This document shows, piece by piece, positions 33,275 to 64,000 of a stretch of DNA of 64,000 nt. The notes under the pieces are model-generated. The model had not been told where the DNA came from. It searched no databases and was given only the letters and a program-made list of their open reading frames with translations. Each line of letters begins with the position of its first letter. Position 1 is the first letter of the stretch. Location of the stretch: the IMG/VR virus record IMGVR_UViG_3300042891_000711, positions 124,001 through 188,000 of that record; one strand, 5' to 3'. Both the position numbers and the translations under genes were made by a program.

Positions 33275-33281
33275 ATTAGTT

Positions 33282-39408: not shown

Positions 39409-40672
39409 ATACAGCCGGTCTCTCTTTTAATATGTCTGCTAGCGTATAGGTATCTTTACGTATACTTTCTAATTGTAGCACACGAGCCTTACCTTTTGCA
39501 AGACTTACTTTATATGTATCTGGCCATTGCTCATCAAACGTTGGTCGTGATTTTAACTGCACAAGTATATCCTGCATAGCACCAGAAGTTTGTGGTATTA
39601 GTTCATCTAGCCAAGGATGTAGTAAGTCGCGTGGTAGTGCCAGCGGACTAAGGATGATGTCAGGGCTAAAGCTAAAAATAACTTTAGCCAAGACATCTAC
39701 GTTTTCTTTTTCAGCAAGCTGGGTAATGTTTGTGACTTCAAACATGCCGGGCAGTGTGAGAGTAAAGTCAATTCGCATTTGCCTTCTATGACTTGCTGTT
39801 CTAACTCCTTCACGGAAATTTGCAAGCCATGTATTGTAGTCAAGTCCTGTTCTAATATATTCTCCAATTCGACCAGTTCCGTCGAGGCTTGCACAGATTT
39901 GCCAGTCACGTAGCCCAGATAGAATATCCCTATAGAGATTGATGCCACGATAGTCGACGCGGCTAAGATTTGTATTGTATCTTGCGTAAACATTTTTACC
40001 ATATCCTAGTTCAACAATGCGTTGCATATAACGCCAATGTTGTTCATACATCAAGGGTTCACCACCCACCCAATATACTTCTTCTACTTGATGATCTTCA
40101 ACTGCTTGAGCAAACTCCTGTTCAATTTGACTATCTTGAAATTTTGATATTTCATTTCTTACTTCGGGCCGCATCCAATTGTTCTTTGGATTATGCCAGT
40201 TAATCATGTCATATTGTCTTTGTTCAGACTCCCATGCACTGCTTAACATATCACCACACATACGACATTTGAAATTGCATAAGTTACTAAAGCGATAATC
40301 CCAGCTTACAGGACGAAGTGTAGTAGTTCCGTCTGGTTGGGTATTCTCTAGTACTTGCAAATACTTATGGCCAAACAGACTATCAAAATAACTACGGTAA
40401 ATGCTAGTGTTAAGTAATTTGTCATTGCACACTTCGCACTCAGGTAGTGTTTCACCTGCCATCATACGGCGACGTACACTTTTCATGTGTTCGCTATTCC
40501 AATGTTCTTCAAGTGTAATAGGAATATATGTGCCAGTACCAGCTTTAGTATCTATGTACTGTTCAAAGTTCTGTGCGGGCTCGCGACTAGCACAGCACAT
40601 ACGTCGCTCAGTTTGCGGACTAAGATATGTATGTACCCACGGTGCTAGACAAAGTGTACTAGGCTTCGACAT
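39383..40672 (-). CDS. Twitch/SPASM-domain radical SAM protein
   Basis: N-terminal CLAPW...MCC...CEVC; NLCNFKCRMC; GGEPL; YNTN. Confidence 0.9.
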   Translation of the reverse strand: MSKPSTLCLAPWVHTYLSPQTERRMCCASREPAQNFEQYIDTKAGTGTYIPITLEEHWNSEHMKSVRRRMMAGETLPECEVCNDKLLNTSIYRSYFDSLFGHKYLQVLENTQPDGTTTLRPVSWDYRFSNLCNFKCRMCGDMLSSAWESEQRQYDMINWHNPKNNWMRPEVRNEISKFQDSQIEQEFAQAVEDHQVEEVYWVGGEPLMYEQHWRYMQRIVELGYGKNVYARYNTNLSRVDYRGINLYRDILSGLRDWQICASLDGTGRIGEYIRTGLDYNTWLANFREGVRTASHRRQMRIDFTLTLPGMFEVTNITQLAEKENVDVLAKVIFSFSPDIILSPLALPRDLLHPWLDELIPQTSGAMQDILVQLKSRPTFDEQWPDTYKVSLAKGKARVLQLESIRKDTYTLADILKERPAVYEWYNNIA

Positions 40673-45947: not shown

Positions 45948-46836
45948 GTGACATTGGGCCTCGGTTTTTAAACACACTTTTGTAGTGATGTTTAAAGAAT
46001 CTACTTTGATCAGCTGTGAAATGTGGAGCAGGTAATCCTAGTTTTACGCTTAATGTATGTGACATTTCACTACATTCTTCTACTAGATTATATACTTTAT
46101 GTTGATGCCATATATTGTTTAGTGCATCGAAGTCCTGCACTTCTCTATAATCCCAATCTGTAATCATAGTCATGTATGTGCCTAGTTTAGCACCGTACAT
46201 GGCCCAGTCACCGTTCTCTACATCTATGCCCACATTGTGCCATATGCTTAGATGATCATAGTTACGTTCGTGTACACGTTTTTCAAATTCTTGTAGTGTA
46301 GGTTTGGCACCACGATCCAAACACATCTTAACACCTTCTCTAAAGCCAGCTCGCCATGCTTGATAAGGACTTTGATTTGGATATGTTGTGCTGTAGCAAT
46401 CATTCATTGCCCAATATCGTGGATCAAAACAAAACTCAACTGCGGTATCATCTGCACCATCGCTGGCTTCGTGTGTACGCATATTGTTTACAAAATCCTT
46501 GGTCCAGCAACTCATACCACCATTGCCGTACATAAGTCCGTTGATAATGTTACGTGCTTTCCAACGGAATACTACATCTCGATTAGTATCATCCAGTGTA
46601 AGCTGTAGGTTAAAGAACTCTGGATCGGGTAAGTTATCACCATCTATTAATACAAAGCGTTCAGTATCACTTGCGGCGGCCGCGGCTTTATGTGCAGCAT
46701 CACTGCCCTTGACACCGTCTACTCGTTTAGCCCACGGCACCATGTTTTGAATTTTAATCCAAAACTCTTCTTTTTTAGGTTCATCGTAACTTAGGTAGAT
46801 GCAGTCTAAATCTGCAATATCAACGATTTGTGTCAT
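45940..46836 (-). CDS. GT-A fold glycosyltransferase-like protein
   Basis: DCIYLSYDEP, RVDGVKG..AAH.AAA, LIDGD (DxD), YGNGG. Confidence 0.6.
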   Translation of the reverse strand: MTQIVDIADLDCIYLSYDEPKKEEFWIKIQNMVPWAKRVDGVKGSDAAHKAAAAASDTERFVLIDGDNLPDPEFFNLQLTLDDTNRDVVFRWKARNIINGLMYGNGGMSCWTKDFVNNMRTHEASDGADDTAVEFCFDPRYWAMNDCYSTTYPNQSPYQAWRAGFREGVKMCLDRGAKPTLQEFEKRVHERNYDHLSIWHNVGIDVENGDWAMYGAKLGTYMTMITDWDYREVQDFDALNNIWHQHKVYNLVEECSEMSHTLSVKLGLPAPHFTADQSRFFKHHYKSVFKNRGPMSRE

Positions 46837-47176
46837 AGTATTCTATATCCTGGTAGGTGTCAGTTGATTCTATTATTAGTCCTGCATGTTTCTTTACAGT
46901 AGCGTAGCCTGTGATACTACTAGTTAATTGTACACGATAACCCGGGTTGTTGTCAATCTTTTTTAGACGGCAGTCTACAATTGTATAGCGGAAATAATTC
47001 TCATATTCATCTTGACTAACAACAACATACTGCGTATCTGCTGGGTGGTTCATCATTGTACACATTGTAATGATTCCAAGTTCATTGTAGTGTAATCTAT
47101 ATTCTTTAACTTCTTCTACAGTAGGTTTGAGCATTGCCAATGCTTTTTCAAATTCACTTAAAGAGTTCATGTTCAT
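46820..47176 (-). CDS. Hypothetical protein
   Basis: 118 aa, AAGGAG RBS. Confidence 0.65.
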   Translation of the reverse strand: MNMNSLSEFEKALAMLKPTVEEVKEYRLHYNELGIITMCTMMNHPADTQYVVVSQDEYENYFRYTIVDCRLKKIDNNPGYRVQLTSSITGYATVKKHAGLIIESTDTYQDIEYYDTNR

Positions 47177-48011
47177 ACTCCTTGACTAATTGATCCGTTA
47201 CCCAAGACTTTTCATGATAGTGAACGGGGTGATATTGATTGGTGTTTGCTATGCGTATCATTGGCAGTTCTGTTTCACACATGACTAACTCGGGCCAGGG
47301 TGTACTAGTCCATGCATTAATTGCTGGCTTCATATGCACAAAATTAATAAAGTCTAGGCTAGGTAGTGTACAATCTTCTACACCAAGTAACTTTGCAGCT
47401 AGAGCATAGACAACATCAGTAGTGGGATTATCATCACGGCAGTTAAGTAATACATTGTCACGTATGTAGGCCCAATTTTTAAATATTTGTTCTGCTAAGG
47501 CAAAGAATTGCGTAGCTTCACGACTGTATCTAAAATACATTAGCCCATTGTAGGTATCGGGCAATTCATTATCGTCAAATAACTTTCTGTATTCTCGTGA
47601 TACGCTTAACTCCTGCTGATAGTTTCTACAGCCGGTGCTTAGTACAACATTTTTTAATCTAAAAGCAGTCCACCAATGTGCAATACTTCTAGTGAATACA
47701 ATGTCACTTTCAAGTTTAATTGTTTCTTTGAATGGAGTGAGATAAAATGCCTGCCATTCATTTGATAACTTCCATGTTTCGTTTTCAGCTAGGTCATTCT
47801 CAATAGTAACAACATAATCAAACACCCGTCGATGTTGTTCTGTTATCTGTTCAAGTGTATGTTTATCAACTGCTACTGCGTATAAACTATCAGGCATGGT
47901 CAGTTTAATACTCATTGCTTGCACGTAAGCAAGCTGTAAGTAATCAACCTCTGTGGTATTCTGCGCAATGGTCATAAAACCCTGCTGTGCTTGATGTGGT
48001 GTTATGCGCAT
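47154..48011 (-). CDS. Glycosyltransferase-like protein (GT8-like)
   Basis: DYLQLA, TPFKETIKLESD, TDVVYA, FVHMK motifs; paralog of next gene. Confidence 0.55.
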   Translation of the reverse strand: MRITPHQAQQGFMTIAQNTTEVDYLQLAYVQAMSIKLTMPDSLYAVAVDKHTLEQITEQHRRVFDYVVTIENDLAENETWKLSNEWQAFYLTPFKETIKLESDIVFTRSIAHWWTAFRLKNVVLSTGCRNYQQELSVSREYRKLFDDNELPDTYNGLMYFRYSREATQFFALAEQIFKNWAYIRDNVLLNCRDDNPTTDVVYALAAKLLGVEDCTLPSLDFINFVHMKPAINAWTSTPWPELVMCETELPMIRIANTNQYHPVHYHEKSWVTDQLVKEYEHELFK

Positions 48012-48778
48012 ACTGTATCTACCAACTGATTAAAATTTTCACTAAGCAAATAATCTTTATCCATCACGTGTATGTTTTGCAGGGCAATGACATGTGCAGA
48101 ATTTTCTTCGCGTATAATCATCTTTTCGCCCGTTATTTCAATGTTTTTAATTAGTTTATCCAGGGTTAACATAGTCCAAGGTATACTTTGTGTGGTGTTA
48201 GTAGTGTACCCATTAATGATGTTGTTAGCAATAGCAAACGCATAATCATTGCGGAAATTACGTTCTCTTAAGTGATATAGTTTTTGATAGTAAGCATAGT
48301 TACGTTCAATACGACCAACTAAATCAAATAACATTTGTGTTTTATCTGTACGCTTAAATGTTATAGCAGTTGCCCATACATAATCTAAACTTAACTGACC
48401 CATGTTGCCCGACATTGACTGTTCAGGGCTTTGATTATTGTGCATTAACTTATAATCAACTGTTGTATCAAGTATAGTTAATAAACTTGAGTCTAACTGT
48501 AGATAGTCACTGTCAAGTAAGATAGTTTCGTCATAAGGGCTAAGTTCGTATGCACGATATCTACCACCATTCTTCCATTCTGTACCACCAGCATAGCCAG
48601 TGCGATAGTTAGCTAAACTAGGTACGCCCAGATCTGTGATAATGGTAGTAGGTAAGTTTAATGTATGTTTTATTAGTCGTGCGGCTTGCTCAGCGATTCT
48701 AACATAATCAACTGTGGCAGTGTTAACAGCAAATAGTACAACACCTTTAGACTTTGCGGGCACGTCGAATTTCTTCAT
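48002..48778 (-). CDS. Glycosyltransferase-like protein (GT8-like)
   Basis: SPYDETILLDSDY (DxD), WAT..F, FRNDYAFAIA, HVMDK. Confidence 0.6.
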   Translation of the reverse strand: MKKFDVPAKSKGVVLFAVNTATVDYVRIAEQAARLIKHTLNLPTTIITDLGVPSLANYRTGYAGGTEWKNGGRYRAYELSPYDETILLDSDYLQLDSSLLTILDTTVDYKLMHNNQSPEQSMSGNMGQLSLDYVWATAITFKRTDKTQMLFDLVGRIERNYAYYQKLYHLRERNFRNDYAFAIANNIINGYTTNTTQSIPWTMLTLDKLIKNIEITGEKMIIREENSAHVIALQNIHVMDKDYLLSENFNQLVDTVCA

Positions 48779-52954: not shown

Positions 52955-53671
52955 TTATGCAGTGGTACTTAAATTAGTCAGTGTTTGTATGCGCACTGTG
53001 TAATCAATTTGAATCAATCTGTTTAGTGATTTTTGTACTGGGCTAAAAATCACGTGTGTTAGTAATTTACCAAGTCCTTCGCCCGAAGAACTAAATCCTT
53101 TTAAGCCTAGTTCATCAAATACAAATTGATCGTTTAAATCTTGGCTGTTATCAAATACCGCTTGTCCGTTTGGTTCACCGTAATCTAATAGACAGCTAAC
53201 AATGATGTCTGAATAAATTTGCCCCGGTACGTGAGTAATCACCATTTTATTGCGTAATGGGTCACCGTTGGCAGCGTTGGTATCATCAACAATCTTAAAA
53301 TATTGTGGACTGTATAAGTCAGCATTTTGTACGTTGGTGTTTGTGGGCAAGTATGTAATAACACCAGTGGGGTCAACTGTAGTACCACCGTTACCGAAAT
53401 GCATTTCAGTAATAAATTGTGTACCTTTATTACTTAAACTTTGTGCAATTGCTTCACTCATGTTTTCATAATGAATAGCGTTGCGTTTGTTTACAAAGAC
53501 TTCGTTAGTCTCAGGATCAAATATCTTAATATGACCTTGAAGGTGTATACCACCACGCTCATCAGGTTGTTTAGCTGGTGCAGCAGTTGGTTGTGAGTTC
53601 ATTGTTGAATCTTGCATTTTTTTATCCATATACTTATTTATTTCATTATCATTCATAGGTCTTTCTACCAT
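52955..53671 (-). CDS. Virion structural protein (baseplate-associated)
   Basis: GHIKIFDP, NAIHYENMS, LDYGEP, VFDELGL, PVQKSLNR; true start probably ~53629 after TAAATA. Confidence 0.6.
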   Translation of the reverse strand: MVERPMNDNEINKYMDKKMQDSTMNSQPTAAPAKQPDERGGIHLQGHIKIFDPETNEVFVNKRNAIHYENMSEAIAQSLSNKGTQFITEMHFGNGGTTVDPTGVITYLPTNTNVQNADLYSPQYFKIVDDTNAANGDPLRNKMVITHVPGQIYSDIIVSCLLDYGEPNGQAVFDNSQDLNDQFVFDELGLKGFSSSGEGLGKLLTHVIFSPVQKSLNRLIQIDYTVRIQTLTNLSTTA

Positions 53672-55293
53672 GCGTCACGTGCAGCTCTAATCCATTGATC
53701 GGTTTCAACACAGATATAAATGTAACTAGCATCGTATACAATGTCACCTTTAATACCAGTATCAGTGGCACTAGCTGGAGTTACATTGGCTAATGTTGCT
53801 GTATATGCTGTTTGCTGATTTGTACTATCAGGAAAACTAATTACTCCCACATTAGCAACTGTAGTAAATAACCAACTGTAACTTACATTACCGTCAATTT
53901 GGTCACCTATTATAATAGCGGCATTGTATTCATTAACAGTAACTTGGTTGAATACTCCGTTAATCGCTGTAATATTTGAACTAATGGCTGCAATGGACAC
54001 ACCACCATTGATTCCAGACGACAGACTTACCGATGGCATTCCTGGGGTATCTTCGTTTGTTTCTAATACACTGCCGTTTGGTAAATTAATATCGCCATCT
54101 TTAGTGAACTGCCAAGTGTGTGTCACCGCTGTGTTTGCATTATATATTAAAACATTAGCTTGGGTTTGAGTAACTGCTACATAATTATTACTAGCAGTTA
54201 TTGCCGCTCCGCCAATATTCGATCCGTTTAATACTGAATAATCTGTTCCTTCAAATAATACACTAGTTAGTGTGCCATTTAATGGTAAGTTTATAGTTGA
54301 TACTGAAATAGTATTAGTATATAAACTAGTCCATTGATACGACATGTTACCCAACGAATACAAACCATCTACAGATGGTATAATATTTCCAAATCCTATC
54401 GATCCGTTAGTAATGTTTTCAATTGATGTTAATTGAGTTGCATTATTAGCATCGACATAGCCCTTCATATTGGTGTTGGCTGTTGTAATTGTATTAGTTA
54501 ACGTAACCGAAAGATTGGCATCATTTCCTAATGCCGCTGCTATTTCATTTAATGTGTCAAGTGCCGACGGTGCGCCACCTATCAATGAGGTAAGTTGTCC
54601 ATCAACGTAGCCCTTCATGTTGGTGTTGGCTGTTACAATAGCGGCATTAGCACCAGTTACTGAATTACTAACGACTGTGATTTCATTTGATTGAATTGTA
54701 TTAGCCGCATCAACATAGCCTTTCATATTGGTGTTGGCTGTTACAATAGCGGCATTAGCACCAGTTACTGAATTGCTAATTATAGTATCTTGTGCATCAA
54801 CATAACCTTTAAGTGCTGTATTAGCTGTTACAATAGCAGCATTGGCACCAGTTACTGAATTGCTAATTATAGTATCTTGTGCATCAACATAACCTTTAAG
54901 TGCTGTATTAGCTGTTACAATAGCAGCATTGGCAGCTATAACCGAATTACTGATTATAGTATCTTGTGCATCAACATAACCTTTAAGTGCTGTATTAGCT
55001 GTTACAATAGCAGCATTGGCAGCTGTTATCTGACTTAATTGTGTTTCGGCATTGGCCTGCCAGGCAGCACTAACGTCAGCAATTGCGCCACTTTGTACTG
55101 CAGCATTAGCTGTAGTTGACGCAGTTAAATTTGCTAAATCTGTAACTACAGTTCCGAGGATGTATGTTTGTAATTGTGCAACATTACTTTGTACTGTTGT
55201 CAATGTTCCGGCAATATTACCAACTACAGGAATTATTACATTCCCCTGCACCGTGGTTAAATTTCCTAATTGGCTAATCTTAATCGTCGACAT
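53665..55293 (-). CDS. Tail fibre-like protein with coiled-coil repeats
   Basis: IKISQL N-terminus, KGYVD repeats, APSALDTLNEIAAALGND motif, C-terminal G..GDI.YD..YIYICV...W.R. Confidence 0.75.
   Translation of the reverse strand: MSTIKISQLGNLTTVQGNVIIPVVGNIAGTLTTVQSNVAQLQTYILGTVVTDLANLTASTTANAAVQSGAIADVSAAWQANAETQLSQITAANAAIVTANTALKGYVDAQDTIISNSVIAANAAIVTANTALKGYVDAQDTIISNSVTGANAAIVTANTALKGYVDAQDTIISNSVTGANAAIVTANTNMKGYVDAANTIQSNEITVVSNSVTGANAAIVTANTNMKGYVDGQLTSLIGGAPSALDTLNEIAAALGNDANLSVTLTNTITTANTNMKGYVDANNATQLTSIENITNGSIGFGNIIPSVDGLYSLGNMSYQWTSLYTNTISVSTINLPLNGTLTSVLFEGTDYSVLNGSNIGGAAITASNNYVAVTQTQANVLIYNANTAVTHTWQFTKDGDINLPNGSVLETNEDTPGMPSVSLSSGINGGVSIAAISSNITAINGVFNQVTVNEYNAAIIIGDQIDGNVSYSWLFTTVANVGVISFPDSTNQQTAYTATLANVTPASATDTGIKGDIVYDASYIYICVETDQWIRAARDAW
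54450..55022 (-). repeat. 87-bp (29-aa) tandem repeats in tail fibre
   Basis: TATAGTATCTTGTGCATCAACATAACCTTTAAG recurs at 54781, 54868, 54955, plus degenerate copies; ANAAIVTANT(AL/NM)KGYVD units. Confidence 0.92.
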
Positions 55294-55295
55294 TC

Positions 55296-58200
55296 TTAAT
55301 CCTCAATAATTGTTTTACTATCTTCAGTAGTTAGTGTATTTACCGCATCTTCTGTTGTAATCATATCTTTAATCGCTGTAATTACGATATTTGTTGCTGT
55401 ACTGCCTTTTAAGAATGTCACTGGTACAGTTGTTGAACCGTCAAATCCAGTACCATCAGTTGCTACTCCACTGCCCAAATTATACCATACATTTGTTGTG
55501 TGTAATTCTATATTTGCTGCAATAGTTACGTTACCGTTATTATCAACAAACGGAATTCCGTTATCGTTTCTACCAACCGGAACAATACTTAACGGGTAAA
55601 CATTTCCGGTGTTAGTACCATTTATTATTATTTCCGAATTAAGTGTGATATTACCAGTTATAGTAGTTGGATAAACTGCAACATTGGATCCATTTATTGC
55701 AATATTACCACTAGCTCTGCCTGTATTCAATGTTGTAATGCCGTAGTAACTTACTTCAACGTTGCTAACATTGGCACCAGTAGTCAATACTGTTACATTA
55801 GCACCTGTTGATGATTGTGTTATGTAATCACCACTAGATACTGTAACATTTCCGCTTAGTTTTAAATAATTATCTTGGAACGTTAAGCTGTTTGAATTAT
55901 TCCGCACAACCAATAATACTCTGGCTACTGAATCAATACCAGCTACCGTTAGTGATGCACCAGATGCAGTTTGTGTTATTACATCACCCACGTTAGCAGT
56001 TATACTTTCAGTTAGTGAAAGATAGTATGAACGAGTCGATGTCACAGTATACGGTGTAGTTGTACTAAGAACTACATTAGACACTGTTCCTGGAACAATT
56101 TGGTCAACACTACCATCAGTTACAACTGCACCGGCGTATTGAATTACTGGAGTAGCAGTACCTTGTGTACCACGACGTATTTGCCCAAGTGTATTAGTAA
56201 TTAAATCACGAGTGTAGTAAGTTATACGTTCACCGTTAATAAACACTACTCCTGGAATAGATATTTGTGCTATACCAATTGCATCCATAAATGGTTCAGC
56301 CAGTTTGCTAGCATCCGCTACGACAATTTCAGTATCAGTTAAGCCCAACGGAGCCGCAAGTGTCGTTGCGTGTGCATCAGCAATACGCAAGTAACTTTCT
56401 TCACGCATCATGTTACTAAACATTCTGTAGGCAATTACATCAACGTTGCTGTTAATTTTAGTATAGACCTGCATGTCTAGTGTGTCAAATACAATACCAG
56501 GAACCATTTCTTCTGGAGCATGGCTCGAGTATGTGTCTACATAAGCACCACCGACAACATCGATATCTTCTGCACGTGTGCCAAGAGCTAAGTCAGTATA
56601 GTTACTCTGTATAATTGTATCAACGGTTGCATCATCTAATAATGGTAAGCCATCTGCATCATATTGTATTTGGTCAAACAAGCCGGTATCAAATGGTGTT
56701 GCTCCACTGAACCCAGGTGCTTGATCAAATCCAAGTCCTTGTACTCGTACACCTGGATAATCAATTCCACGTAGTAGTTGATTCAAATCACGTGCTGGCA
56801 TTGAAGCACCAGGCTCATAATATCCCACAATACGATCGTTAGCAGTAGTAAAATTAGCCGAGTTATATTCAGTATAATCATCCGTATGTACAAAAGTAGA
56901 GCCTGATGTTATATTTGCTGTTACTATAAATGCATGACGAACAGCACCTGCCAGTGAGCCCACATGAGTCACGATATCGCCAACGGTATAAGCAGTATTT
57001 GCTGTCCATTCCTGCACGCTACTTGTATAGCTAATTCTATCAAATTTTAGTGTTGTATCAAATGTTCTGACTTGATTATTTTTAAGCACAGCATACGCAG
57101 TTGCTGGTGTTGTATTTGTACCATTGATTAACACAGTTGGAGTTAAGAAATATCCAGTGCCACGAGTTAAGATTTCAATACTGGTTACGGTACCTAAATC
57201 AAAATCAATAATTGCACGTGCTGTTGCTCCCGTAGCTGCGAGGCCGCCGCCAACAATAGTAACGATTGGTTCAGCAGTGTATCCACTACCGCCATATTCC
57301 ACAATGATATTCTCGACACGGTGATTTCTATTCGCATACCATTGATTATACGTATCAGTTTGCCACAATGCTTCATCTTTAATTACATTTTCGCCACTTG
57401 GACTACGGAATACTTTTGTTTCAGTATCGTAATAAGCCGGTAAATCAAAGTCAGTTACACTACCTGCAAATTCATCATTACTGTCATAATTAATAGAATA
57501 TTCACGTATTTTAGTTGAATATGGTTTAACTTCTGTAATGTAATTTTCGTAATACGTTTGATTATCTTTAATATAATTAGGATATTGCAATAGTGAACGT
57601 AACTTATGTGATACACTAATAAAGCTGGTTTTAAATATCCAATCAACATATTTTTGCTCATTGAATAGATAGTTAATCATTACAAAGAATAATTTGTTAA
57701 ATTCTGTATCTAATTCGCCAACAAAAATATCATCTTTAAGTGCGTTAATTATATAACGAACTTCAGTGGTCGGAGTTGTATTATTAATAAAATTCCCAGA
57801 CGATGTTTTTAATTGTATAGTGCCGTCTTGTATTCCTACAACGTCAAATTGGTTATTGCTGTTAAGAACTAGTAGGTTCCACCCACGACTATTGCCAGTA
57901 CTTACTCTGACCAGTACTTCTTCACCGACAGCCACTGGTAATTTTAAGGCATCTGTTAATGTTTCAACTACATACTCGAGTTGAGTGTCTGTGCCATAAC
58001 CAGGAGCATACCAATCAACATACTCCCAATACAAGTCAGTTTTATAACTTTGAATTCGAATTATTTCCCAAATTTTAGTAGTAGACAACTCGTATAGCAC
58101 CCACAGGTTATCTCGGGTAGTATCTTGATTTACTAGAACTTTATACCCAACAGCCAATACACTCACATCGAGATATTGTAACTCTATTTCTGTTGCTATT

Positions 58201-61200
58201 TTTAAATTGTATTCACCTAATTTAATATTAGGTTGTGCTTCGGCTGAACTAATAGTAGTCAAATCACAATTTCTTGCTATCGGTTTAGTTATCAATATAC
58301 TATTCGCATAGTCCACTAAGTTAGCATAGGCTGCAAATCTATCAGCAAATATAGCCTGACGTGGTCTAGTGCCCAGGCCAAATTTATCAGCCTGGCTGAG
58401 TGCAGGATCAGGAACTTCTGCACCTAATATATCAATACCAGCTAGACTATCAATTAGCTTATTAATAATTTTAGGAGATATAATACTATTTGCATTACCT
58501 TTTTCTACTAGTTCATACTCACTGTGAATAATATTAGTGTTCTTAACTGTGTTATAGTCAAGGTGCAAAATAGTATTTTTCGCAGAAAGATAACTACCCA
58601 CGTTGTATACAACAAATGCATTGTTTTGTATAATTGCTGCATAAGGTGTACCTTGATTTTTAGGATTTTCAATTATATCTTTTATTGCGGCAATTGGTAA
58701 ACGTCTAGTTTCGTTGTTTAGATCAACTGTAGTTTTATCTTTAACCCAGTAAAAATATTTGATACTGATAATATTAGTAACTTGGTCAACATACACAAGT
58801 TCAACATAGGCACTATCGTCGGCATATTTTGGAATGCCTTCACCACCGTTGGCAACATACGCACTTGGTAAGTAATCACTTTCTACCCACTCTAATAATT
58901 CGACAGTTGAGCCAGGGAATAATCGACCCCAGTTAATACTACGATATGTTAATGTATCTTGCTCATAGTCAATATAACTAAGTTGACTTAGGTTCCACCA
59001 TACTTGTCCAACTTGCTCGCCATTCCAGAATATAGTATCATTTAAACTAACTGCACTATTTGTGCCGCGATTATACACAGCTGGATCGTAGCCGGTTTTG
59101 TATGATATTTCTTGATCTGCACGGCCAAGTATTTTACCTTTTGCAGGATCAATAAATTCTAATGTTGTTAGAATAGTGTTTGACAGATTGCTGTATAGAT
59201 ACATTCTATTAACTGATTCTATATCCACTGTCGGTTGCTGATATCTAATTAAACTCCAACCACGTTTGTTTATTGTATTATTAAATAGATATATACTACC
59301 TGTGTTTTCAACAACATTATTAATATAAGTTGATGTAGCAACACCATTAATCCAAATTGGATATACAACTTCAACTCCGTCAACTATTACTGTACCCGTC
59401 ACAAAATGATCTGTCCCAGCCGGTGATACTGTAATATTTGTACTAGCAGTGGCATCAGCACTAACAATATATCTAATATTATCTGACGCTTTTTGGGTAA
59501 TTATATCCCCAGCACGTACAGTTACCGCTGTAGATAATGTAAGATTGGTTATAGTGTCATCGCTTGGTGCACTTACTATAATGTGTCCGCCAATTATGTC
59601 AATTGCTGCGCCAAAGCCGTCGCCTGTGTTTAAATCAGTTGGATTAAGTTGTTGACAGAATGCATAACGTCCAGGATGTTCAACCATATCACGAGGGTCA
59701 TCGTACAATTCATATGTATACACACTACCGCTGGCTTTAACACTATCAACAAACGGCGTAGAATCATCATCAATTACTGTGGTATCGCTGTCAAAGGTAG
59801 TAAACGTATTGGTTGTTCCTCCATCACTGCTGATAACCAACATGTATGCGTTACGAGCTAATATAACTTTAGTACCAAAATATTCATTGTTACTACTGTA
59901 TGGATTAACAATAATCTGCATGAACGCAAATATAGCCAAGCCTGCGTCAGCATACACTGCACCACTACCTGATAGAACACGTAAACGATTTTTAGCTACA
60001 GTTTTATCACTGTCTAATCTTAAGTATCCATTTTCATTGACTGCCGTAATACCCAATAGTTTAGCATCATTGATATCTTTTATTAAACTATCAAGACTTG
60101 ACATAGGCAATCCGGTAATAGGATCATTATGCAATGGTTGTACAGTAATTTGGAAGTTATCCAACCGAATTGTATCGCCCGGAGTAAATGTTGGATTTTT
60201 CGTAAATCCTCTGTTGATACCGTATAGCGTACCTTTGTTATGGAATTTCCACACAGCACCAGTATTATAAACTGTATCTGCATTATAGAATGGAGCACCG
60301 ATATAGAATGCACAATTATTTGAACAAATAGTCAGCGATGTTCCGAATCGTGCACCTTGTTGGATAGCACTTAAACTTCCACCTAAGCTGTCAACCCCAA
60401 TTAATTTTTCTAATAGAGTAAATTGATTAGTTTCAATTTTTACATTTTTACCTACCCCAAGCGGTACAAATAGTGTTATTTCGTTTGCGCCAGTCTTAGT
60501 ATAATTAAATGTTTCGATATCATCAACTGTTACTGCATGCACAGGTGCAATATTCCCTTCTGTAGTATACACTGTGCCATTTGTACTATTGAATGCCTCA
60601 ATTACCCGATCGTAAACATAAACAGCACCAGCACTTACATTTTCAACATAAGATATACGCGGTAATACATTACCATCTACAGTAATCGATGCAGTATTAG
60701 TTCCTACAGGAATTGATCGGTCAACTGTTGTTATTCCATCACTAAACACTGCTACGTTAACAGTATCTGCAGGTGCGCCTACACCAAGTTGTGCACCATT
60801 TAAACTTGCATCAATACAAAAACCAAATTCACTGCCTGCCGGTCCAACAAGTGGATAAAGTGGATCAGTTGGATCACCGATTAACGCATAGTACGGACCT
60901 TGTGAAATTGTCAGCGTATCGTTAACGTTTCCGGATATAAATGTTATCGTTGTTCCGGATAAGGTGTAATCAATATTTGGAATGTATGTACGTGTCGCAC
61001 TAGTAACTACTAATGAATTAGCATCATCAGTTACTTCGGGTGTGAATGGTACTGTTATAGATGATACTGAACCAGATGTAGTAACTGTTCCATTTGCTTC
61101 AGTTACAAATCGTTTTAAACCGTAGACATAAACTTTAGGAGTCGATTCATAAGGTGCACCGACATATAACCAGTGACCCAATTCATCAAACGCAAAGCCA

Positions 61201-64000
61201 TAGCCGAACTGTCCGTTAACGGCGCTGACATTGCCTGCAATAACCTGTCCTCGATTCCATACAGTTTCGCCTTCAAGTTTATTATAGGTATAGATTAAAC
61301 CAACATTAGCAGCACCAGCTAAACCAGAACTTGTCGGTGCATTAACTGCTAGACGTACCTGTGTACCATCAACGGCTGTATCGATATGTGAACCATAGGT
61401 AAATGTGTTTACACCGTCGGGTATTATTGTAGTTGATGTACTATATATGTTTGCAGTATTTTTATCAAATACATTAACTGCACCCGTATTAGTCGAAACA
61501 GATAAGTTTGCATATAACGTAGTACCAACAAAAATAGTTTGCTCGGCATTATCAATCATTTTTAATGCTCGACCGTAGCCAATGTTTGCAGAATATTCAT
61601 TATTAGTTGTCAATGAAGATACTGTAGTGTTTGCTGGGAATATATTATTAGTACTAACTATCTGACTTGCGCTTACAGAAAAAGCATTTGCACTAGTAAG
61701 GAAATTTGATATAATACCCACAGCATTACCTGTAATAGTTGTGATATTAGTTACAACGTTGCCGCCAATAGTTAATGTACTTGTGGCATTGGCCAATGCT
61801 ACATTACTAAATGTAATGTACATGTCATTGGTTTTTACCAAGCGTTGATCTATTTCCCATGGATGTGTTTTTTCGTAGACTTTCCATGTGCCACTAGGTT
61901 GCGTACCATATGGTTGACCCTGCACTGCATTAGTTTCGGCATCATCGTCGATCCAAATCTTTTCACCAACTTTCCATTGATGTTTAGGAGAATATAATCG
62001 TGCATCTTCCATGTATTGAAATCGTATGCTATCTAAAATAAACAACATACCGTCGCCATCAAGTGTGGTTAATTGTGTTGTATCACCAGAATATTTGACT
62101 AATATATTATTGAGGTCAACTATTTCTTCAACTTGGTAGAATCCATCAAATTCTGTAGTAAAACTACGAATTAGGAATATATCGCCAGCGGCCAATCCGT
62201 GTGGATCATCGGTGGTAAATGTCACATATCCATCGAGTGAGTTTGACACCAACAATACATGATTGTTAGTTTCTGATACTCGATAAACATTCCAGTTTTG
62301 CGAAAAGTCTTTTGCACACCATATAGTATATCCAGTACCTATTGCACTTAAAGAATTGTTTAAATCTATAAAATTAGCCAAATCAAATATAGTAGTATCA
62401 ACATCGTCGATGTTTACATATCCGGCGGTGGCAATATCATTATTATAATCACTAGCTGCATCTCTGTTTAATGCAATAGTACCTGCATATTGTTCAGTTG
62501 ATTTATATAGTTGTGATTTATTAAATGTAGTTACACCGTCACTGCCATCAGCAGTCACAAAAGTAGCAATTGCAGGATTAACCGAAAATGCTTTTTCGTC
62601 GAGTGCAATTTCAACATACGGGTTAGTATCTAACGCACCGTATTCACCCACACGTATTGCCCATTCTTCGTAGAAATTTATAGCACTACTTAAATTGTTA
62701 AATTCTGCATTTGATAATTGATTAATTGCATTTGCAGAACCTTTTTGTTTAATGAATCCTTTATACAATTCAATTTGTGTAGTGTCACTTAGGCCCAGAT
62801 CTGCTAGATATTGACGTGGTTTAAATCCGATTAAGCCGTGACTATATTTGATTTGGTCTGCATCTTTAAAGTTTGTATATGAATCATAATATACCTGCGA
62901 CTTAGCAGCTATAGTGGCAAAGTTTGGTAACAACCCCTTTTTAATTTCAGTTGTAGAAATTTGTTTCCAGTAAGCAAATACAAATTCAGTTGTTGCTGCA
63001 ACATTTTGTAGGGCAACATAATATTGATTTTTATATTGTACCAGATCACCTTTTAAATAATCCTTGCCGCCTTGCCAGGCATCTACATCACCAGAATTAT
63101 AAATAAAGCCCGGAGCACTTAAACTGCCATCCCAATCTGCTGTTTTTTGTCCAATTAATTTTAATCTAAATTGTCTATTACCTAGTTCTGGTTTGTAAAT
63201 AATATCGTTGAACACTGTTGTATTATCAAATATCAATACATGTTCATATTGCACCAAATTTAATTCAATGTAGCCTATAACTGCATCGTTAGTTAATGTC
63301 AGTTTAAAAGCAGTTGGACTACGCAATACGTTATAGTTTGTAGTCTTAACCAGGGCAAAATTTTGATCTAATACTTTAGAACCGTATTGACTATCTGTAA
63401 TAGCATCCGTAATTGCGCCAACGGTAACTGCATTTATTACATTAGCCACCGGACTTAGTACCAAGATACTACCAGGTGCCCACCCTTGTTGCGCCCAGAA
63501 TAAGAATTCCTTAGTTGATAGTTTCCAATTACGAGTTTCACCAAGTTGTTCATCGGTATCATTGAACGTAAAGCCTTGTGCCATTAAATGTCTTTCGTAA
63601 CTAATTAAAAAATCAGCTACTTGTTGTTGAGTATTAAATTCGTAGCCGTATGGCACTGTTAGTTTTAAGTTTTGATAATCTTTAAACACAGTCACTGAAT
63701 TGTTTAATACAGTAATTTTATATGCGTTTGTGTTTATAACACTTGGAATAATAGTAAAGTATGGATTGGATAAATTATATCCACGTACACTATACCCGTT
63801 TGTAGTTTTTTCAACAATTACACCGCTGTAGACTATCCTATCAACCGGAGTTGATTTATACAAATGTACATTATAATTTTCATTTGGGATAATAATACTA
63901 TCATTTGTACTAGTCGGTGAACTTTGCTCTGCCAACACCTGCAGATATTTTTGATCACTGAATCCAGCCATTTTATATGCAAGATTAACTTCGTAATTTT
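55296..64000 (-). CDS. Giant (>2890 aa) virion structural protein, baseplate/tail-associated, 5'-truncated by window edge
   Basis: Frame open to the window end; FG-GAP-like propeller motifs (FG...VGAP...GAVYVY), GSGY..P repeats, Thr/Asn-rich inserts. Confidence 0.75.
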   Translation of the reverse strand, partial: NYEVNLAYKMAGFSDQKYLQVLAEQSSPTSTNDSIIIPNENYNVHLYKSTPVDRIVYSGVIVEKTTNGYSVRGYNLSNPYFTIIPSVINTNAYKITVLNNSVTVFKDYQNLKLTVPYGYEFNTQQQVADFLISYERHLMAQGFTFNDTDEQLGETRNWKLSTKEFLFWAQQGWAPGSILVLSPVANVINAVTVGAITDAITDSQYGSKVLDQNFALVKTTNYNVLRSPTAFKLTLTNDAVIGYIELNLVQYEHVLIFDNTTVFNDIIYKPELGNRQFRLKLIGQKTADWDGSLSAPGFIYNSGDVDAWQGGKDYLKGDLVQYKNQYYVALQNVAATTEFVFAYWKQISTTEIKKGLLPNFATIAAKSQVYYDSYTNFKDADQIKYSHGLIGFKPRQYLADLGLSDTTQIELYKGFIKQKGSANAINQLSNAEFNNLSSAINFYEEWAIRVGEYGALDTNPYVEIALDEKAFSVNPAIATFVTADGSDGVTTFNKSQLYKSTEQYAGTIALNRDAASDYNNDIATAGYVNIDDVDTTIFDLANFIDLNNSLSAIGTGYTIWCAKDFSQNWNVYRVSETNNHVLLVSNSLDGYVTFTTDDPHGLAAGDIFLIRSFTTEFDGFYQVEEIVDLNNILVKYSGDTTQLTTLDGDGMLFILDSIRFQYMEDARLYSPKHQWKVGEKIWIDDDAETNAVQGQPYGTQPSGTWKVYEKTHPWEIDQRLVKTNDMYITFSNVALANATSTLTIGGNVVTNITTITGNAVGIISNFLTSANAFSVSASQIVSTNNIFPANTTVSSLTTNNEYSANIGYGRALKMIDNAEQTIFVGTTLYANLSVSTNTGAVNVFDKNTANIYSTSTTIIPDGVNTFTYGSHIDTAVDGTQVRLAVNAPTSSGLAGAANVGLIYTYNKLEGETVWNRGQVIAGNVSAVNGQFGYGFAFDELGHWLYVGAPYESTPKVYVYGLKRFVTEANGTVTTSGSVSSITVPFTPEVTDDANSLVVTSATRTYIPNIDYTLSGTTITFISGNVNDTLTISQGPYYALIGDPTDPLYPLVGPAGSEFGFCIDASLNGAQLGVGAPADTVNVAVFSDGITTVDRSIPVGTNTASITVDGNVLPRISYVENVSAGAVYVYDRVIEAFNSTNGTVYTTEGNIAPVHAVTVDDIETFNYTKTGANEITLFVPLGVGKNVKIETNQFTLLEKLIGVDSLGGSLSAIQQGARFGTSLTICSNNCAFYIGAPFYNADTVYNTGAVWKFHNKGTLYGINRGFTKNPTFTPGDTIRLDNFQITVQPLHNDPITGLPMSSLDSLIKDINDAKLLGITAVNENGYLRLDSDKTVAKNRLRVLSGSGAVYADAGLAIFAFMQIIVNPYSSNNEYFGTKVILARNAYMLVISSDGGTTNTFTTFDSDTTVIDDDSTPFVDSVKASGSVYTYELYDDPRDMVEHPGRYAFCQQLNPTDLNTGDGFGAAIDIIGGHIIVSAPSDDTITNLTLSTAVTVRAGDIITQKASDNIRYIVSADATASTNITVSPAGTDHFVTGTVIVDGVEVVYPIWINGVATSTYINNVVENTGSIYLFNNTINKRGWSLIRYQQPTVDIESVNRMYLYSNLSNTILTTLEFIDPAKGKILGRADQEISYKTGYDPAVYNRGTNSAVSLNDTIFWNGEQVGQVWWNLSQLSYIDYEQDTLTYRSINWGRLFPGSTVELLEWVESDYLPSAYVANGGEGIPKYADDSAYVELVYVDQVTNIISIKYFYWVKDKTTVDLNNETRRLPIAAIKDIIENPKNQGTPYAAIIQNNAFVVYNVGSYLSAKNTILHLDYNTVKNTNIIHSEYELVEKGNANSIISPKIINKLIDSLAGIDILGAEVPDPALSQADKFGLGTRPRQAIFADRFAAYANLVDYANSILITKPIARNCDLTTISSAEAQPNIKLGEYNLKIATEIELQYLDVSVLAVGYKVLVNQDTTRDNLWVLYELSTTKIWEIIRIQSYKTDLYWEYVDWYAPGYGTDTQLEYVVETLTDALKLPVAVGEEVLVRVSTGNSRGWNLLVLNSNNQFDVVGIQDGTIQLKTSSGNFINNTTPTTEVRYIINALKDDIFVGELDTEFNKLFFVMINYLFNEQKYVDWIFKTSFISVSHKLRSLLQYPNYIKDNQTYYENYITEVKPYSTKIREYSINYDSNDEFAGSVTDFDLPAYYDTETKVFRSPSGENVIKDEALWQTDTYNQWYANRNHRVENIIVEYGGSGYTAEPIVTIVGGGLAATGATARAIIDFDLGTVTSIEILTRGTGYFLTPTVLINGTNTTPATAYAVLKNNQVRTFDTTLKFDRISYTSSVQEWTANTAYTVGDIVTHVGSLAGAVRHAFIVTANITSGSTFVHTDDYTEYNSANFTTANDRIVGYYEPGASMPARDLNQLLRGIDYPGVRVQGLGFDQAPGFSGATPFDTGLFDQIQYDADGLPLLDDATVDTIIQSNYTDLALGTRAEDIDVVGGAYVDTYSSHAPEEMVPGIVFDTLDMQVYTKINSNVDVIAYRMFSNMMREESYLRIADAHATTLAAPLGLTDTEIVVADASKLAEPFMDAIGIAQISIPGVVFINGERITYYTRDLITNTLGQIRRGTQGTATPVIQYAGAVVTDGSVDQIVPGTVSNVVLSTTTPYTVTSTRSYYLSLTESITANVGDVITQTASGASLTVAGIDSVARVLLVVRNNSNSLTFQDNYLKLSGNVTVSSGDYITQSSTGANVTVLTTGANVSNVEVSYYGITTLNTGRASGNIAINGSNVAVYPTTITGNITLNSEIIINGTNTGNVYPLSIVPVGRNDNGIPFVDNNGNVTIAANIELHTTNVWYNLGSGVATDGTGFDGSTTVPVTFLKGSTATNIVITAIKDMITTEDAVNTLTTEDSKTIIED

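What the first reader, a model, noticed from the sequence alone, without database searches (positions are those of the whole stretch)
53665..61830. Tail proteins strongly enriched in (A/G)-Asn motifs, potential glycosylation sites
Seen: the 542-aa fibre has roughly 28 AN/GN dipeptides by manual count. The giant protein has discrete patches such as LANATSTLTIGGNVVTNITTITGNAV...SANA...PANTT and GNVT...GANVT...GANVS...SGNIA...GNIT...GNVT. Established: chlorovirus PBCV-1 capsid N-glycans sit on atypical (A/G)N-type sites and are made by virus-encoded enzymes. Inference: these may be the acceptor sites for the adjacent GT cluster. They could instead be structural turn or coiled-coil core residues.
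Basis: partly seen in the sequence, partly recalled or inferred. Interest (0 to 1): 0.65.

Follow-up and report, generated by a model that had tools for sequence, protein, structure and literature searches.

The report
Asparagine-rich repeats in phage tail fibres
The excess of Ala/Gly-Asn pairs in this jumbo phage's tail fibre is real, but it comes from repeated structural motifs rather than a recognisable sugar-attachment signal, even though a hidden cluster of sugar-transferring enzymes does lie next door.

Summary
The window belongs to an uncultivated jumbo myovirus related to RsoM2USA and Atu_ph07. The 542-aa fibre has exactly 28 [AG]N against 12.8 expected (z 5). After collapsing its 29-residue tandem repeat it still has 19 against 8.9. 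The giant protein really has 4344-4370 aa and runs out of the window. It is not enriched overall (z 0.9), only in two patches and its last 700 aa (z 2). Three fibre-like neighbours are not enriched.

The excess sits in fixed positions of repeated modules. A homotrimer model puts 9 of 10 fibre [AG]N asparagines at the helix interface, like Asn core layers of trimeric coiled coils. No PBCV-type sequon occurs, and NxS/T is not enriched.

The adjacent GT cluster is real but invisible to Pfam. It has two GT8-like paralogues and a DGD-motif GT-A enzyme, followed by four N-twitch radical SAM genes, a carbamoyltransferase and amino-sugar enzymes. The cassette is near-universal in the clade. Half of the cassette-bearing relatives, and cultured RsoM2USA, show no [AG]N excess.

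Virion glycosylation stays plausible, since XacN1 has PAS-positive virion bands. [AG]N as its acceptor is not supported.

The parts
53665..55293 (-). Tail fibre, 542 aa (P0001). It has an N-terminal attachment segment, a repeat stalk, a collar motif (GGAPSALDTLNEIAAALGND) and a C-terminal domain shared with cyanomyovirus structural proteins.
   Evidence: PHROG tail fibre families; mosaic tblastn hits to cyanophage, mycobacteriophage and Caulobacter phage fibres; weak match of the collar motif to 80alpha FibU.
54424..55029 (-). Repeat stalk of the fibre (residues 89-290). It holds five 29-aa units (GANAAIVTANTxxKGYVDAQDTIISNSVT) plus further TANTNMKGYVD copies, and carries 15 of the 28 [AG]N.
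   Evidence: TRF finds an 87-bp period x3.7 at 54707-55033. The homotrimer model scores ipSAE 0.66 against a best control of 0.00, with interface residues spaced 3-4 apart. 9 of 10 [AG]N Asn are in the interface.
55296..64000 (-). C-terminal 2900 aa of a 4344-4370 aa virion structural protein ('giant'). The ORF runs off the window end.
   Evidence: phrog_10938 virion structural protein, E 2e-166. Syntenic homologues are 4449 aa in Atu_ph07 and 2541 aa in RsoM2USA, where it is one of ten SDS-PAGE virion protein bands assigned to ORFs with mass spectrometry (PMC8504454).
61392..61931 (-). Patch 1 of the giant (P0002 residues 681-860). It is N/T/S-rich, with 8 [AG]N against 3.4 expected from local composition.
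   Evidence: local p 0.008, post hoc.
55410..56006 (-). Patch 2 of the giant (P0002 residues 2656-2854). It contains two 'ANVGDxITQ'-type repeat units and GN[VI]T strands, with 9 [AG]N against 4.6 expected.
   Evidence: The same unit occurs three times in a 1336-aa protein elsewhere in the genome.
48002..48778 (-). p258, a GT8-like GT-A glycosyltransferase candidate with a D-S-D motif in 'LLDSDYL'.
   Evidence: hhalign to the p285 family gives 99.1%, E 1.3e-18. Alignment A5 has invariant D89 and D91. A homologue exists in RsoM2USA.
47154..48011 (-). p285, a GT8-like GT-A glycosyltransferase candidate.
   Evidence: AF2 pLDDT 94.7. Foldseek top hits are glycogenin, LgtC, a GT8 protein and the UGGT catalytic domain, E 1e-9, with 474 hits at E<=0.001. 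The atlas search points to GT8/Nucleotid_trans clusters at 0.95. No Pfam or PHROG hit.
45940..46836 (-). p298, a GT-A fold enzyme with invariant D65-G66-D67-N68 and a helical C-terminal domain. It is the best conserved gene of the cassette.
   Evidence: Alignment A2. AF2 pLDDT 89. Foldseek top hit is PBCV-1 A64R, E 3.6e-4, but with TM only 0.29/0.38. VIA Z is 8-9.7 over 130-142 residues to many GT-A enzymes and nucleotidyltransferases. The Pfam PF13641 hit is only 10.8 bits.
39383..45977 (-). Four radical SAM genes holding five domains, all of the N-terminal-twitch family. They lie directly downstream of p298.
   Evidence: Pfam Radical_SAM/SPASM. NF033640 N_Twi_rSAM at E 2e-81 to 8.5e-216, all above cut-off. 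Conserved next to p298 in relatives and in RsoM2USA.
35420..36910 (-). NodU/CmcH-type carbamoyltransferase in the same co-directional gene block.
   Evidence: Pfam Carbam_trans_N and Carbam_trans_C, E 3e-38 and 1e-47. The NodU match is well below cut-off.
29993..30508 (-). p298-like domain (residues 641-812) at the C-terminus of the 872-aa ORF 29810-32428. It lacks the DGD motif.
   Evidence: hhalign of A2 against p872 gives 98.1%, E 8e-14. Second p298-like copies in large ORFs are common in relatives.
27755..29829 (+). Nucleotide-sugar tailoring pair: an NAD-dependent epimerase/dehydratase (27755-28741) and a DegT/EryC1-type aminotransferase (28696-29829).
   Evidence: Pfam E 1.6e-40 and 1.3e-84.

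Best explanation
The Ala/Gly-Asn excess is a by-product of repeated structural sequence modules in fibrous virion proteins. It is not a glycosylation sequon.

In the fibre, the excess comes from a 29-residue unit (8 helical turns) and related TANTxxKGYVD units. These are predicted to form a parallel three-stranded coiled coil. In that model the Asn that follows Ala sits at the helix-helix interface, as in the polar 'Asn at position d' core layers known from trimeric autotransporter stalks, and the small Ala, Ser or Gly before it makes room.

In the giant protein the weaker, local excess comes from recurring beta-rich modules. These are an 'LSxNITANVGDYITQ' unit in this giant and, in relatives, 'WTANTxY...TGNVY' units resembling CBM5/12. 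The signature there is [AG]-N-[VI].

Shown here: the statistics, the motif positions, the modular distribution across relatives, and the absence of sequons. Inferred from a model: the trimer and the interface position of Asn.

The neighbouring genes do encode a real, Pfam-invisible glycosylation cassette: two GT8-like enzymes, one DGD GT-A enzyme, N-twitch radical SAM enzymes, a carbamoyltransferase and amino-sugar enzymes. It lies co-directional with the tail genes. Its acceptor is unknown. Virion glycosylation is plausible, but nothing ties it to [AG]N.
For: (1) Statistics and position.
- The excess sits in fixed positions of repeat units: 15 of 28 fibre sites lie in residues 89-290.
- The other proteins of this genome with the strongest excess carry either the same TANTNLKGYVD unit (716 aa) or other repeats: GN[VI]T runs, a collagen-like GPQGIQGNV, and ANVGD units.

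(2) Fibre structure.
- Hydrophobic periodicity peaks at 3.625 = 29/8 residues per turn.
- The homotrimer model scores ipSAE 0.66 against a best control of 0.00. That mark was reached by 21 of 30 solved pairs and 0 of 23 single chains. The runs agree in at least 57% of contacts, and the partner pLDDT is at least 71.
- 9 of 10 [AG]N Asn in residues 158-295 are interface residues, against 72 of 138 residues overall (Fisher p 0.012). The SN asparagines are not at the interface.
- Asn-rich cores in trimeric coiled coils are established for TAA stalks, and polar (Asn/Gln) cores for phage P22 gp26 (PMC13580157).

(3) Fibre homologues at the same position.
- In relatives they use other repeats with the same small-residue-Asn core: LTSNAAVQAGE 11-mers and TANIGQIGYTDNK.

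(4) Giant homologues in relatives.
- In the last 700 aa of 71 homologues, AN O/E is 2.27 and GN 1.63. [AG]N[VI] is 5.1-fold enriched, while NxS/T is 1.06-fold.
- Per-protein z tracks the number of named modules (Spearman 0.75).

(5) No link to the GT cassette.
- p298 is present in 21 of 23 related contigs of at least 80 kb.
- Of 49 cassette-bearing contigs, 26 have a giant C-part with z<1.
- RsoM2USA has p258, p285, p298 and rSAM homologues, yet its giant scores z -0.6 and its neighbours about 0.
- p452, p485 and p313, which lie nearest the GTs, have z <= 0.1.

(6) No known N-glycosylation signature.
- 0 [AG]NTxT or [AG]NIPG motifs and no GT41 gene.

(7) Unglycosylated control.
- T4 fibres gp34 and gp36 also show a mild excess (z 2.4 and 2.3).
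Against: - The trimer is an ESMFold2 model made without an alignment, not a structure. The calibration of its score was for two copies, not three.
- A crude hydrophobic-moment register placed the Asn beside rather than in the core. That method penalises Asn by construction.
[AG]N[VI][ST] is 7-fold enriched there, which a sequon could also produce.
- Conservation in a repeat is what either a structural residue or a modification site would show.
- A real GT cassette lies 7 kb away in the same gene block.
- A related jumbo phage, XacN1, has PAS-positive virion proteins (PMC5852040).
Confidence: 0.72

Rival explanations
1. The Asn of (A/G)N motifs are N-glycosylation acceptor sites, and the adjacent phage-encoded GT cassette modifies them in the cytoplasm, as in chlorovirus PBCV-1.
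For: - The GT cassette is real and lies in the same co-directional block as the tail genes.
- p298's best Foldseek hit is the PBCV-1 capsid glycosyltransferase A64R.
- [AG]N[VI][ST] is 7-fold enriched in the C-terminal 700 aa of giant homologues.
- XacN1, a related jumbo phage with GTs and a carbamoyltransferase beside its giant gene, has at least two PAS-stained virion bands.
Against: - No full PBCV-type sequon in either protein.
- NxS/T is not enriched, and there is no GT41 gene.
- The A64R match is generic GT-A: TM 0.29/0.38, with many other GT-A enzymes and nucleotidyltransferases at equal Z. On my own knowledge, A64R is not the Asn-linking enzyme.
- 9 of 10 fibre [AG]N Asn are at the trimer interface in the model.
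- The excess does not follow the cassette across relatives or in RsoM2USA.
- The fibre-like proteins nearest the GTs lack it.
Confidence: 0.07
2. The tail or other virion proteins are glycosylated by the cassette, but on other residues (for example O-linked Ser, Thr or Tyr, as GT8-type enzymes commonly do). The [AG]N excess is unrelated. This reading is compatible with the best explanation.
For: - Two GT8-like enzymes are present (glycogenin, GlyE and UGGT are protein-directed relatives).
- The cassette is syntenic with the baseplate and fibre genes in about 35 loci and in RsoM2USA.
- XacN1 virions are PAS-positive.
- Mycobacteriophage capsid and tail-tube glycosylation is established (Freeman et al. 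2023, as cited in PMC12619734).
Against: - No acceptor was identified.
- Gene position is the only link to the virion.
- GT8 enzymes also build LPS and other glycans.
- No experimental data exist for this clade's cassette.
Confidence: 0.3
3. The GT / rSAM / amino-sugar cassette acts on something other than the virion, such as phage DNA (glycosyl hypermodification) or host envelope glycans. The fibres are unmodified.
For: - Phage GTs are best known for DNA glucosylation and serotype conversion (PMC12619734).
- The window also carries nucleotide-metabolism genes and a 7-deazaguanine-type gene set (FolE, PTPS, rSAM).
Against: - Only one thymidylate-synthase-family gene is present, and it looks canonical (E 5e-105, full length). 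No hydroxymethylase candidate was found in the 218.9-kb record, though the record is only 62% complete.
- The cassette sits inside the late structural block, not with the replication genes.
Confidence: 0.25
4. The excess is a chance or pure-composition effect.
For: - The giant as a whole is at expectation (z 0.9-1.4).
- The patch p-values are post hoc.
Against: - The fibre z of 5.1 survives repeat collapse (z 4.0).
- AN ranks 2nd and GN 6th of 194 dipeptides in the C-terminal 700 aa of 71 giant homologues.
Confidence: 0.03

Closest known systems
Polar-core trimeric coiled coils: Asn at position d in trimeric autotransporter adhesin stalks, and the polar core of the phage P22 gp26 tail needle (PMC13580157 and Hartmann et al. 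2009 cited there)
   Same: Long repetitive stalk, alpha-helical periodicity, predicted parallel homotrimer, Asn recurring at interface positions with 3-4 spacing, and motifs of the V-x-x-N-T type.
   Different: The unit is 29 residues (8 turns) rather than heptads or pentadecads. No sequence-level family match exists (Pfam none). Ion coordination and the register are untested.
Staphylococcus phage 80alpha upper fibre FibU (gp68, PDB 6v8i) and the widespread fibre collar motif
   Same: The segment xNxxKxYxDxxxxxLxxxAPxxLxTLxELAxAxxN aligns with FibU residues 261-299. PHROG tail-fibre families match the same stretch.
   Different: The match is weak (E 0.63) and covers 39 residues only. FibU lacks the AN-rich 29-mer repeats.
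PBCV-1 Vp54 atypical N-glycosylation (sites 280-NIPG, 302-NTGT, 399-NTET, 406-NTAT; PMC9614988)
   Same: A virus-encoded GT-A enzyme lies near structural genes, and Asn is preceded by a small residue in some motifs.
   Different: No NTxT or NIPG context (0 sites). The target there is a capsid protein of a eukaryotic virus. Here the Asn are predicted at a coiled-coil interface. The resemblance of p298 to A64R is generic GT-A.
Virion glycosylation in phages: mycobacteriophage capsid and tail-tube O-glycans (Freeman et al. 2023, via PMC12619734), and PAS-positive virion bands of jumbo phage XacN1 (PMC5852040)
   Same: Phage-encoded GTs lie beside structural genes. XacN1 has a GT9, another GT and a carbamoyltransferase just downstream of its 3313-aa giant gene, the same layout as here.
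   Different: The XacN1 GTs are not homologues of p258, p285 or p298 by tblastn. Acceptor residues in XacN1 are unknown. The mycobacteriophage glycans sit at the C-termini of the capsid and tail-tube subunits (PMC12619734), and I know of no report of Asn linkage for them.
GT8 family retaining glycosyltransferases (glycogenin, LgtC)
   Same: The predicted fold of p285 matches (Foldseek E 1e-9). p258 has a DxD-type motif, and both have a conserved His...Lys near the C-terminus.
   Different: The Pfam GT8 model finds nothing in the genome. p285 has E-S-D in place of D-x-D. Donor and acceptor are unknown.

Membership tests
Chlorovirus-type atypical N-glycosylation sites | Asn in the contexts (A/G)NTXT or (A/G)NIPG | tested here: not met
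   0 matches in the fibre and 0 in the full 4370-aa giant. The site list comes from PMC9614988.
Chlorovirus-type atypical N-glycosylation sites | Excess of (A/G)N over composition in the supposed targets | tested here: inconclusive
   Met in the fibre (z 5.1, or 4.0 after repeat collapse). Not met in the giant overall (z 0.9), nor in p452, p485 and p313.
Chlorovirus-type atypical N-glycosylation sites | Acceptor Asn exposed on the assembled protein | tested here: not met
   In the homotrimer model, 9 of 10 [AG]N Asn of residues 158-295 are interface residues. This is a model only, and the giant modules were not folded.
Chlorovirus-type atypical N-glycosylation sites | Glycan covalently attached to Asn | not testable with these tools
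   Needs glycopeptide mass spectrometry of virions.
Chlorovirus-type atypical N-glycosylation sites | Site excess goes with presence of the glycosylation genes across relatives | tested here: not met
   26 of 49 cassette-bearing contigs have a giant C-part with z<1. RsoM2USA has the cassette and no excess.
Bacterial cytoplasmic N-glycosylation (HMW1C/NGT type) | GT41 N-glycosyltransferase gene | tested here: not met
   PF13844 finds no match at E<=1 in the 218.9-kb record. The record is 62% complete.
Bacterial cytoplasmic N-glycosylation (HMW1C/NGT type) | Enrichment of N-x-S/T sequons in the target | tested here: not met
   Fibre 13 vs 12.5 and giant 42 vs 39. In 71 giant C-termini, 769 vs 725.
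Trimeric coiled-coil fibre stalk with Asn core layers | Alpha-helical hydrophobic periodicity in the repeat | tested here: met
   The strongest hydrophobic moment is at 3.625 = 29/8 residues per turn. Only harmonics of the 29-residue period can peak, and the helical one is the largest.
Trimeric coiled-coil fibre stalk with Asn core layers | Parallel homotrimer | tested here: met
   ipSAE 0.66 against a best control of 0.00. The mark was reached by 21 of 30 solved pairs and 0 of 23 single chains. Runs agree in at least 57% of contacts, and pLDDT is at least 71. This is a model, and the calibration was for two copies.
Trimeric coiled-coil fibre stalk with Asn core layers | Asn at core (a/d) positions | tested here: met
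   9 of 10 [AG]N Asn are in the interface against 72 of 138 residues overall, p 0.012. SN Asn 174, 203 and 210 are outside.
Trimeric coiled-coil fibre stalk with Asn core layers | Ion or water coordination by the Asn layers | not testable with these tools
   Needs a crystal or cryo-EM structure.
GT8-like GT-A glycosyltransferases (p285, p258) | GT-A fold most similar to GT8 members | tested here: met
   p285 AF2 pLDDT 94.7. Foldseek matches glycogenin, LgtC and GT8 at E 1e-9 to 3e-7. p258 is tied to it by hhalign at 99.1%.
GT8-like GT-A glycosyltransferases (p285, p258) | DxD metal/nucleotide-sugar motif | tested here: inconclusive
   p258 has invariant D89-x-D91. p285 has E101-S-D103, with D103 invariant and E101 nearly so.
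GT8-like GT-A glycosyltransferases (p285, p258) | Match to the curated family model (Pfam PF01501) | tested here: not met
   No match at E<=1 in the genome, and no Pfam or PHROG hit for either ORF.
GT-A glycosyltransferase (p298) | GT-A / nucleotide-diphospho-sugar transferase fold with DxD | tested here: met
   Z 8-9.7, rmsd 3.1-3.9 A, 130-142 residues aligned over residues 4-155. D65-G66-D67 is invariant in 23 sequences. Nucleotidyltransferases of the same fold score equally, so transferase chemistry is inferred from the DxD motif. Pfam PF13641 gives only 10.8 bits against a cut-off of 27.

The most novel reading that the evidence does not exclude
A near-universal tail-module cassette of this jumbo-phage clade builds an unusual tailored glycan. 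The cassette has three Pfam-invisible GT-A enzymes, five N-twitch radical SAM domains, a carbamoyltransferase and amino-sugar enzymes. The glycan is attached to virion tail proteins, including exposed Asn in the [AG]-N-[VI]-[ST] motifs of the giant protein's C-terminal modules. That would be a bacterial-virus counterpart of chlorovirus atypical N-glycosylation.
Probability: 0.07. Interest if true: 0.75.

Novelty: new member of a known kind. Interest (0 to 1): 0.3.

Why it matters
As a glycosylation sequon, the finding would have been the first Asn-linked, virus-encoded protein glycosylation in a bacteriophage. The evidence points instead to ordinary fibre architecture: Asn-lined coiled coils and recurring binding modules.

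What does merit follow-up is the by-product. A conserved set of glycosyltransferases and radical SAM enzymes is embedded in the tail genes of a large, mostly uncultivated jumbo-phage clade, and it is missed by Pfam, PHROGs and NCBIfam. The clade has a cultured member, RsoM2USA, in which virion glycosylation could be tested directly.

The case also shows that dipeptide enrichments in fibre proteins need repeat-aware and clade-wide controls before they are read as modification sites.

Tried and rejected
- Pfam, PHROG and NCBIfam scans of all larger ORFs of the window found no glycosyltransferase.
- Genome-wide searches with PF00535, PF00534, PF01501, PF13844, PF13641 and PF13692 gave nothing above cut-off. 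Only the 10.8-bit PF13641 trace in p298 was useful as a lead.
- PDB sequence searches with four unknown ORFs, the giant's C-terminus and a profile of the ANVGD unit gave nothing.
- The atlas search of the giant's last 351 aa gave nothing.
- No near-identical DNA exists in cultured phages.
- hhalign found no relation between the p285/p258 family and p298.
- The hydrophobic-moment register put the Asn beside the core. I set it aside because the scale penalises Asn by construction, and the trimer model gives an explicit interface.
- A presence/absence correlation of the GT cassette with [AG]N excess inside the clade is not possible. The cassette is present in 21 of 23 contigs of at least 80 kb. 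The test was replaced by the spread of z among carriers and by RsoM2USA.
- The 'moraphage' paper (PMC12619734) describes a different lineage and was used only for background.
- Both structure-prediction jobs went to the GT candidates, so the giant's modules and the fibre monomer were not folded with AlphaFold2.
- The large protein searches were not used, as they were not needed.
Full report
**What the locus is.** The window is bases 124001-188000 of a 218.9-kb IMG/VR virus record judged 62% complete. From about 64 kb down to about 34.5 kb, the genes form one co-directional minus-strand block with small gaps or overlaps. In order they are:
- a giant structural protein;
- the 542-aa fibre;
- a highly conserved 238-aa protein (p238);
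- two fibre-like proteins, p452 and p485 (the latter with a Peptidase_G2 intramolecular-chaperone domain);
- p313, p258, p285, p118 and p298;
- four radical SAM genes;
- three unknown ORFs;
- a carbamoyltransferase and a GDSL-like ORF.

p238 is 38-54% identical to proteins of Atu_ph07, Sinorhizobium phage Phosso and the Rak2-like jumbo myoviruses, some of them annotated as baseplate protein. It has more than 600 relatives in IMG/VR. The giant matches phrog_10938 'virion structural protein' at E 2e-166. It has syntenic homologues of 4449 aa in Atu_ph07 and 2541 aa in RsoM2USA. In RsoM2USA the homologue is one of ten SDS-PAGE virion protein bands assigned to ORFs with mass spectrometry (PMC8504454). 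The ORF is cut by the window: the gene call is 4344 aa and the longest ORF is 4370 aa.

**Checking the observation.** The fibre has exactly 28 AN/GN, against 12.8 +/- 3.0 in composition-preserving shuffles (z 5.1).
- AN carries the excess (21 vs 8.1). GN alone is not significant.
- The DNA holds an 87-bp tandem repeat, which encodes five 29-aa units.
- With these collapsed to one, the excess persists (19 vs 8.9, z 4.0).
- It lies in the N-terminal 88 aa and the repeat stalk, not in the C-terminal domain.
- Ser before Asn is also enriched. The reverse dipeptide is not.

The giant is at expectation as a whole: z 1.4 for the in-window part and 0.9 for the full length. The last 700 aa give z 2.0. 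p452, p485 and p313, the fibre-like proteins nearest the GT genes, show no excess.

Genome-wide, the top-scoring proteins are the 542-aa fibre and four proteins outside the window:
- a 716-aa fibre with about twelve TANTNLKGYVD units;
- a 650-aa protein with GN[VI]T runs;
- a collagen-like protein with GPQGIQGNV repeats;
- a 1336-aa protein with ANVGDxITQ units.

**Where the asparagines sit in the fibre.**
- The 29-residue unit has its strongest hydrophobic moment at 29/8 = 3.625 residues per turn.
- A three-copy model of residues 60-300 scored ipSAE 0.66 against a best control of 0.00. That mark was reached by 21 of 30 solved pairs and 0 of 23 single chains. The runs agree in at least 57% of contacts, and the partner pLDDT is at least 71. 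The calibration was for two copies.
- The listed interface residues have the 3-4 spacing of a coiled coil.
- 9 of the 10 [AG]N asparagines in residues 158-295 are interface residues of copy 1, against 72 of 138 residues overall (p 0.012). The asparagines preceded by Ser are not at the interface.
- This matches the Asn-at-position-d core layers described for trimeric autotransporter stalks. A related polar (Asn/Gln) core motif is known from the P22 gp26 needle (PMC13580157).
- The collar segment aligns weakly with the 80alpha upper fibre.
- Fibres at the same genomic position in relatives use different repeats built on the same small-residue-Asn theme: LTSNAAVQAGE 11-mers and TANIGQIGYTDNK units.

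**The giant across the clade.** In 71 homologues, the last 700 aa have AN O/E 2.27 (rank 2 of 194 dipeptides), GN 1.63 (rank 6) and NV 1.86. The rest of the protein is near 1.
- The signature is [AG]-N-[VI], 5.1-fold enriched.
- NxS/T is at 1.06-fold.
- The sites lie in recurring modules. One is an 'LSxNITANVGDYITQ' unit. Another, in strongly enriched relatives, is 'WTANTxY...TGNVY...FANV' units resembling CBM5/12 (weak CBM_5_12 hit).
- Per-protein z correlates with the number of such modules (Spearman 0.75).

**The GT cluster.** No library model finds a glycosyltransferase in the window or the record. A 10.8-bit PF13641 trace led to p298.
- p298: an alignment of 23 relatives shows an invariant D-G-D-N after a beta strand. 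The AlphaFold2 model has pLDDT 89. Its first 155 residues match GT-A enzymes at Z 8-9.7. PBCV-1 A64R, the glycocin S-glycosyltransferases and STIV A197 are among many equal hits, alongside nucleotidyltransferases of the same fold.
- p285: the model has pLDDT 94.7 and matches glycogenin, LgtC and other GT8 members at E 1e-9.
- p258 is the paralogue of p285 and has a DxD motif.
- The 872-aa ORF ends in a p298-like domain that lacks the DGD motif.
- Downstream lie five N-terminal-twitch radical SAM domains in four ORFs and a carbamoyltransferase. Upstream, on the other strand, lie a dehydratase/epimerase and a DegT aminotransferase.
- The cassette is syntenic in about 35 of 80 fetched loci. p298 is present in 21 of 23 related contigs of at least 80 kb. 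The whole cassette is found in RsoM2USA but not in Atu_ph07.

**Does the excess follow the cassette?** It does not.
- Among 49 cassette-bearing contigs, the giant's C-part has z<1 in 26 and z>=3 in 15.
- RsoM2USA has no excess in its giant (z -0.6) or in the neighbouring structural proteins.
- T4 fibres gp34 and gp36 show a mild excess (z 2.4 and 2.3). On my own knowledge, T4 fibres are not glycoproteins.
- Neither protein contains a single (A/G)NTXT or (A/G)NIPG motif. The PBCV-1 sites are listed in PMC9614988.
- No GT41 gene is present.

**What remains open.** Virion glycosylation in this group is plausible. XacN1, the closest described relative of RsoM2USA, carries a GT9, another GT and a carbamoyltransferase just downstream of its 3313-aa giant gene. 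Its virions give at least two PAS-stained bands (PMC5852040 and its supplement).

The acceptor proteins and residues are unknown. DNA or host-envelope targets for the cassette are not excluded, although only one canonical thymidylate synthase and no hydroxymethylase candidate was found. The giant's modules were not folded, so exposure of their asparagines is untested.

**Verdict.** The acceptor-site interpretation is not supported.

Noticed in passing
window 39383-45977 (-): Four adjacent radical SAM genes hold five domains, all of the NF033640 'N-terminal twitch' family. One ORF of 851 aa is a tandem fusion. They are conserved directly downstream of the GT-A gene p298 in many relatives and in RsoM2USA. 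Their substrate is unknown: sugar tailoring or protein modification.
   Followed up: partly
window 55296-64000 (-), continuing to about window coordinate 68400 outside the window: The 'giant' is truncated by the window. The real gene is 4344-4370 aa, so the in-window ATG at 63971 is internal.
   Followed up: yes
window 29810-32428 (-): An 872-aa ORF without any Pfam or PHROG hit ends in a p298-like GT-A domain that has lost the DGD motif. Relatives carry similar second copies inside ORFs of 400-1100 aa.
   Followed up: partly
window 4130-8738 and 15241-16773 (+): FolE (GTP cyclohydrolase I) lies at 4792-5493. A PTPS/QueD-like ORF lies among the small ORFs downstream of it. Two B12-binding radical SAM enzymes lie at 6696-8738 and 15241-16773, and a short DegT-like ORF at 4130-4714. 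The set is reminiscent of 7-deazaguanine or other base-modification pathways.
   Followed up: no
window 18929-21700 (+): A MoxR-like AAA ATPase is followed by a DUF2201 metallopeptidase/VWA protein, a known paired system of unclear role in phages.
   Followed up: no
window 25048-26420 (+) and 32421-33337 (-): DHFR, a canonical thymidylate synthase, dCMP deaminase and an APS-kinase-like P-loop protein are present. The thymidylate synthase is the only one of its family in the record.
   Followed up: partly
G000:C1:48226-50376, 63339-65291, 1889-2788 and 65300-69310 (outside the window): Further fibrous proteins of the same phage also show [AG]N excess. They are a 716-aa fibre with about twelve TANTNLKGYVD units, a 650-aa protein with GNVTGNITGNIT runs, a collagen-like protein with GPQGIQGNV repeats, and a 1336-aa protein with three ANVGDxITQ units.
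   Followed up: partly
L058, L049, L050, L037 (giant homologues, last ~700 aa): Some relatives carry 5-7 tandem 'W-T-A-N-T-x-Y ... T-G-N-V-Y ... F-A-N-V' units resembling CBM5/12 carbohydrate-binding modules. These give [AG]N z-scores of 7-8 and are probably receptor-binding modules.
   Followed up: partly
window 49141-50082 (-): p313 has no family hit. It is Gly/Thr/Asn-rich with a conserved N-terminus (MxYxSGGLIxAxDYN), looks structural, and sits between the fibres and the GT genes in all relatives.
   Followed up: no
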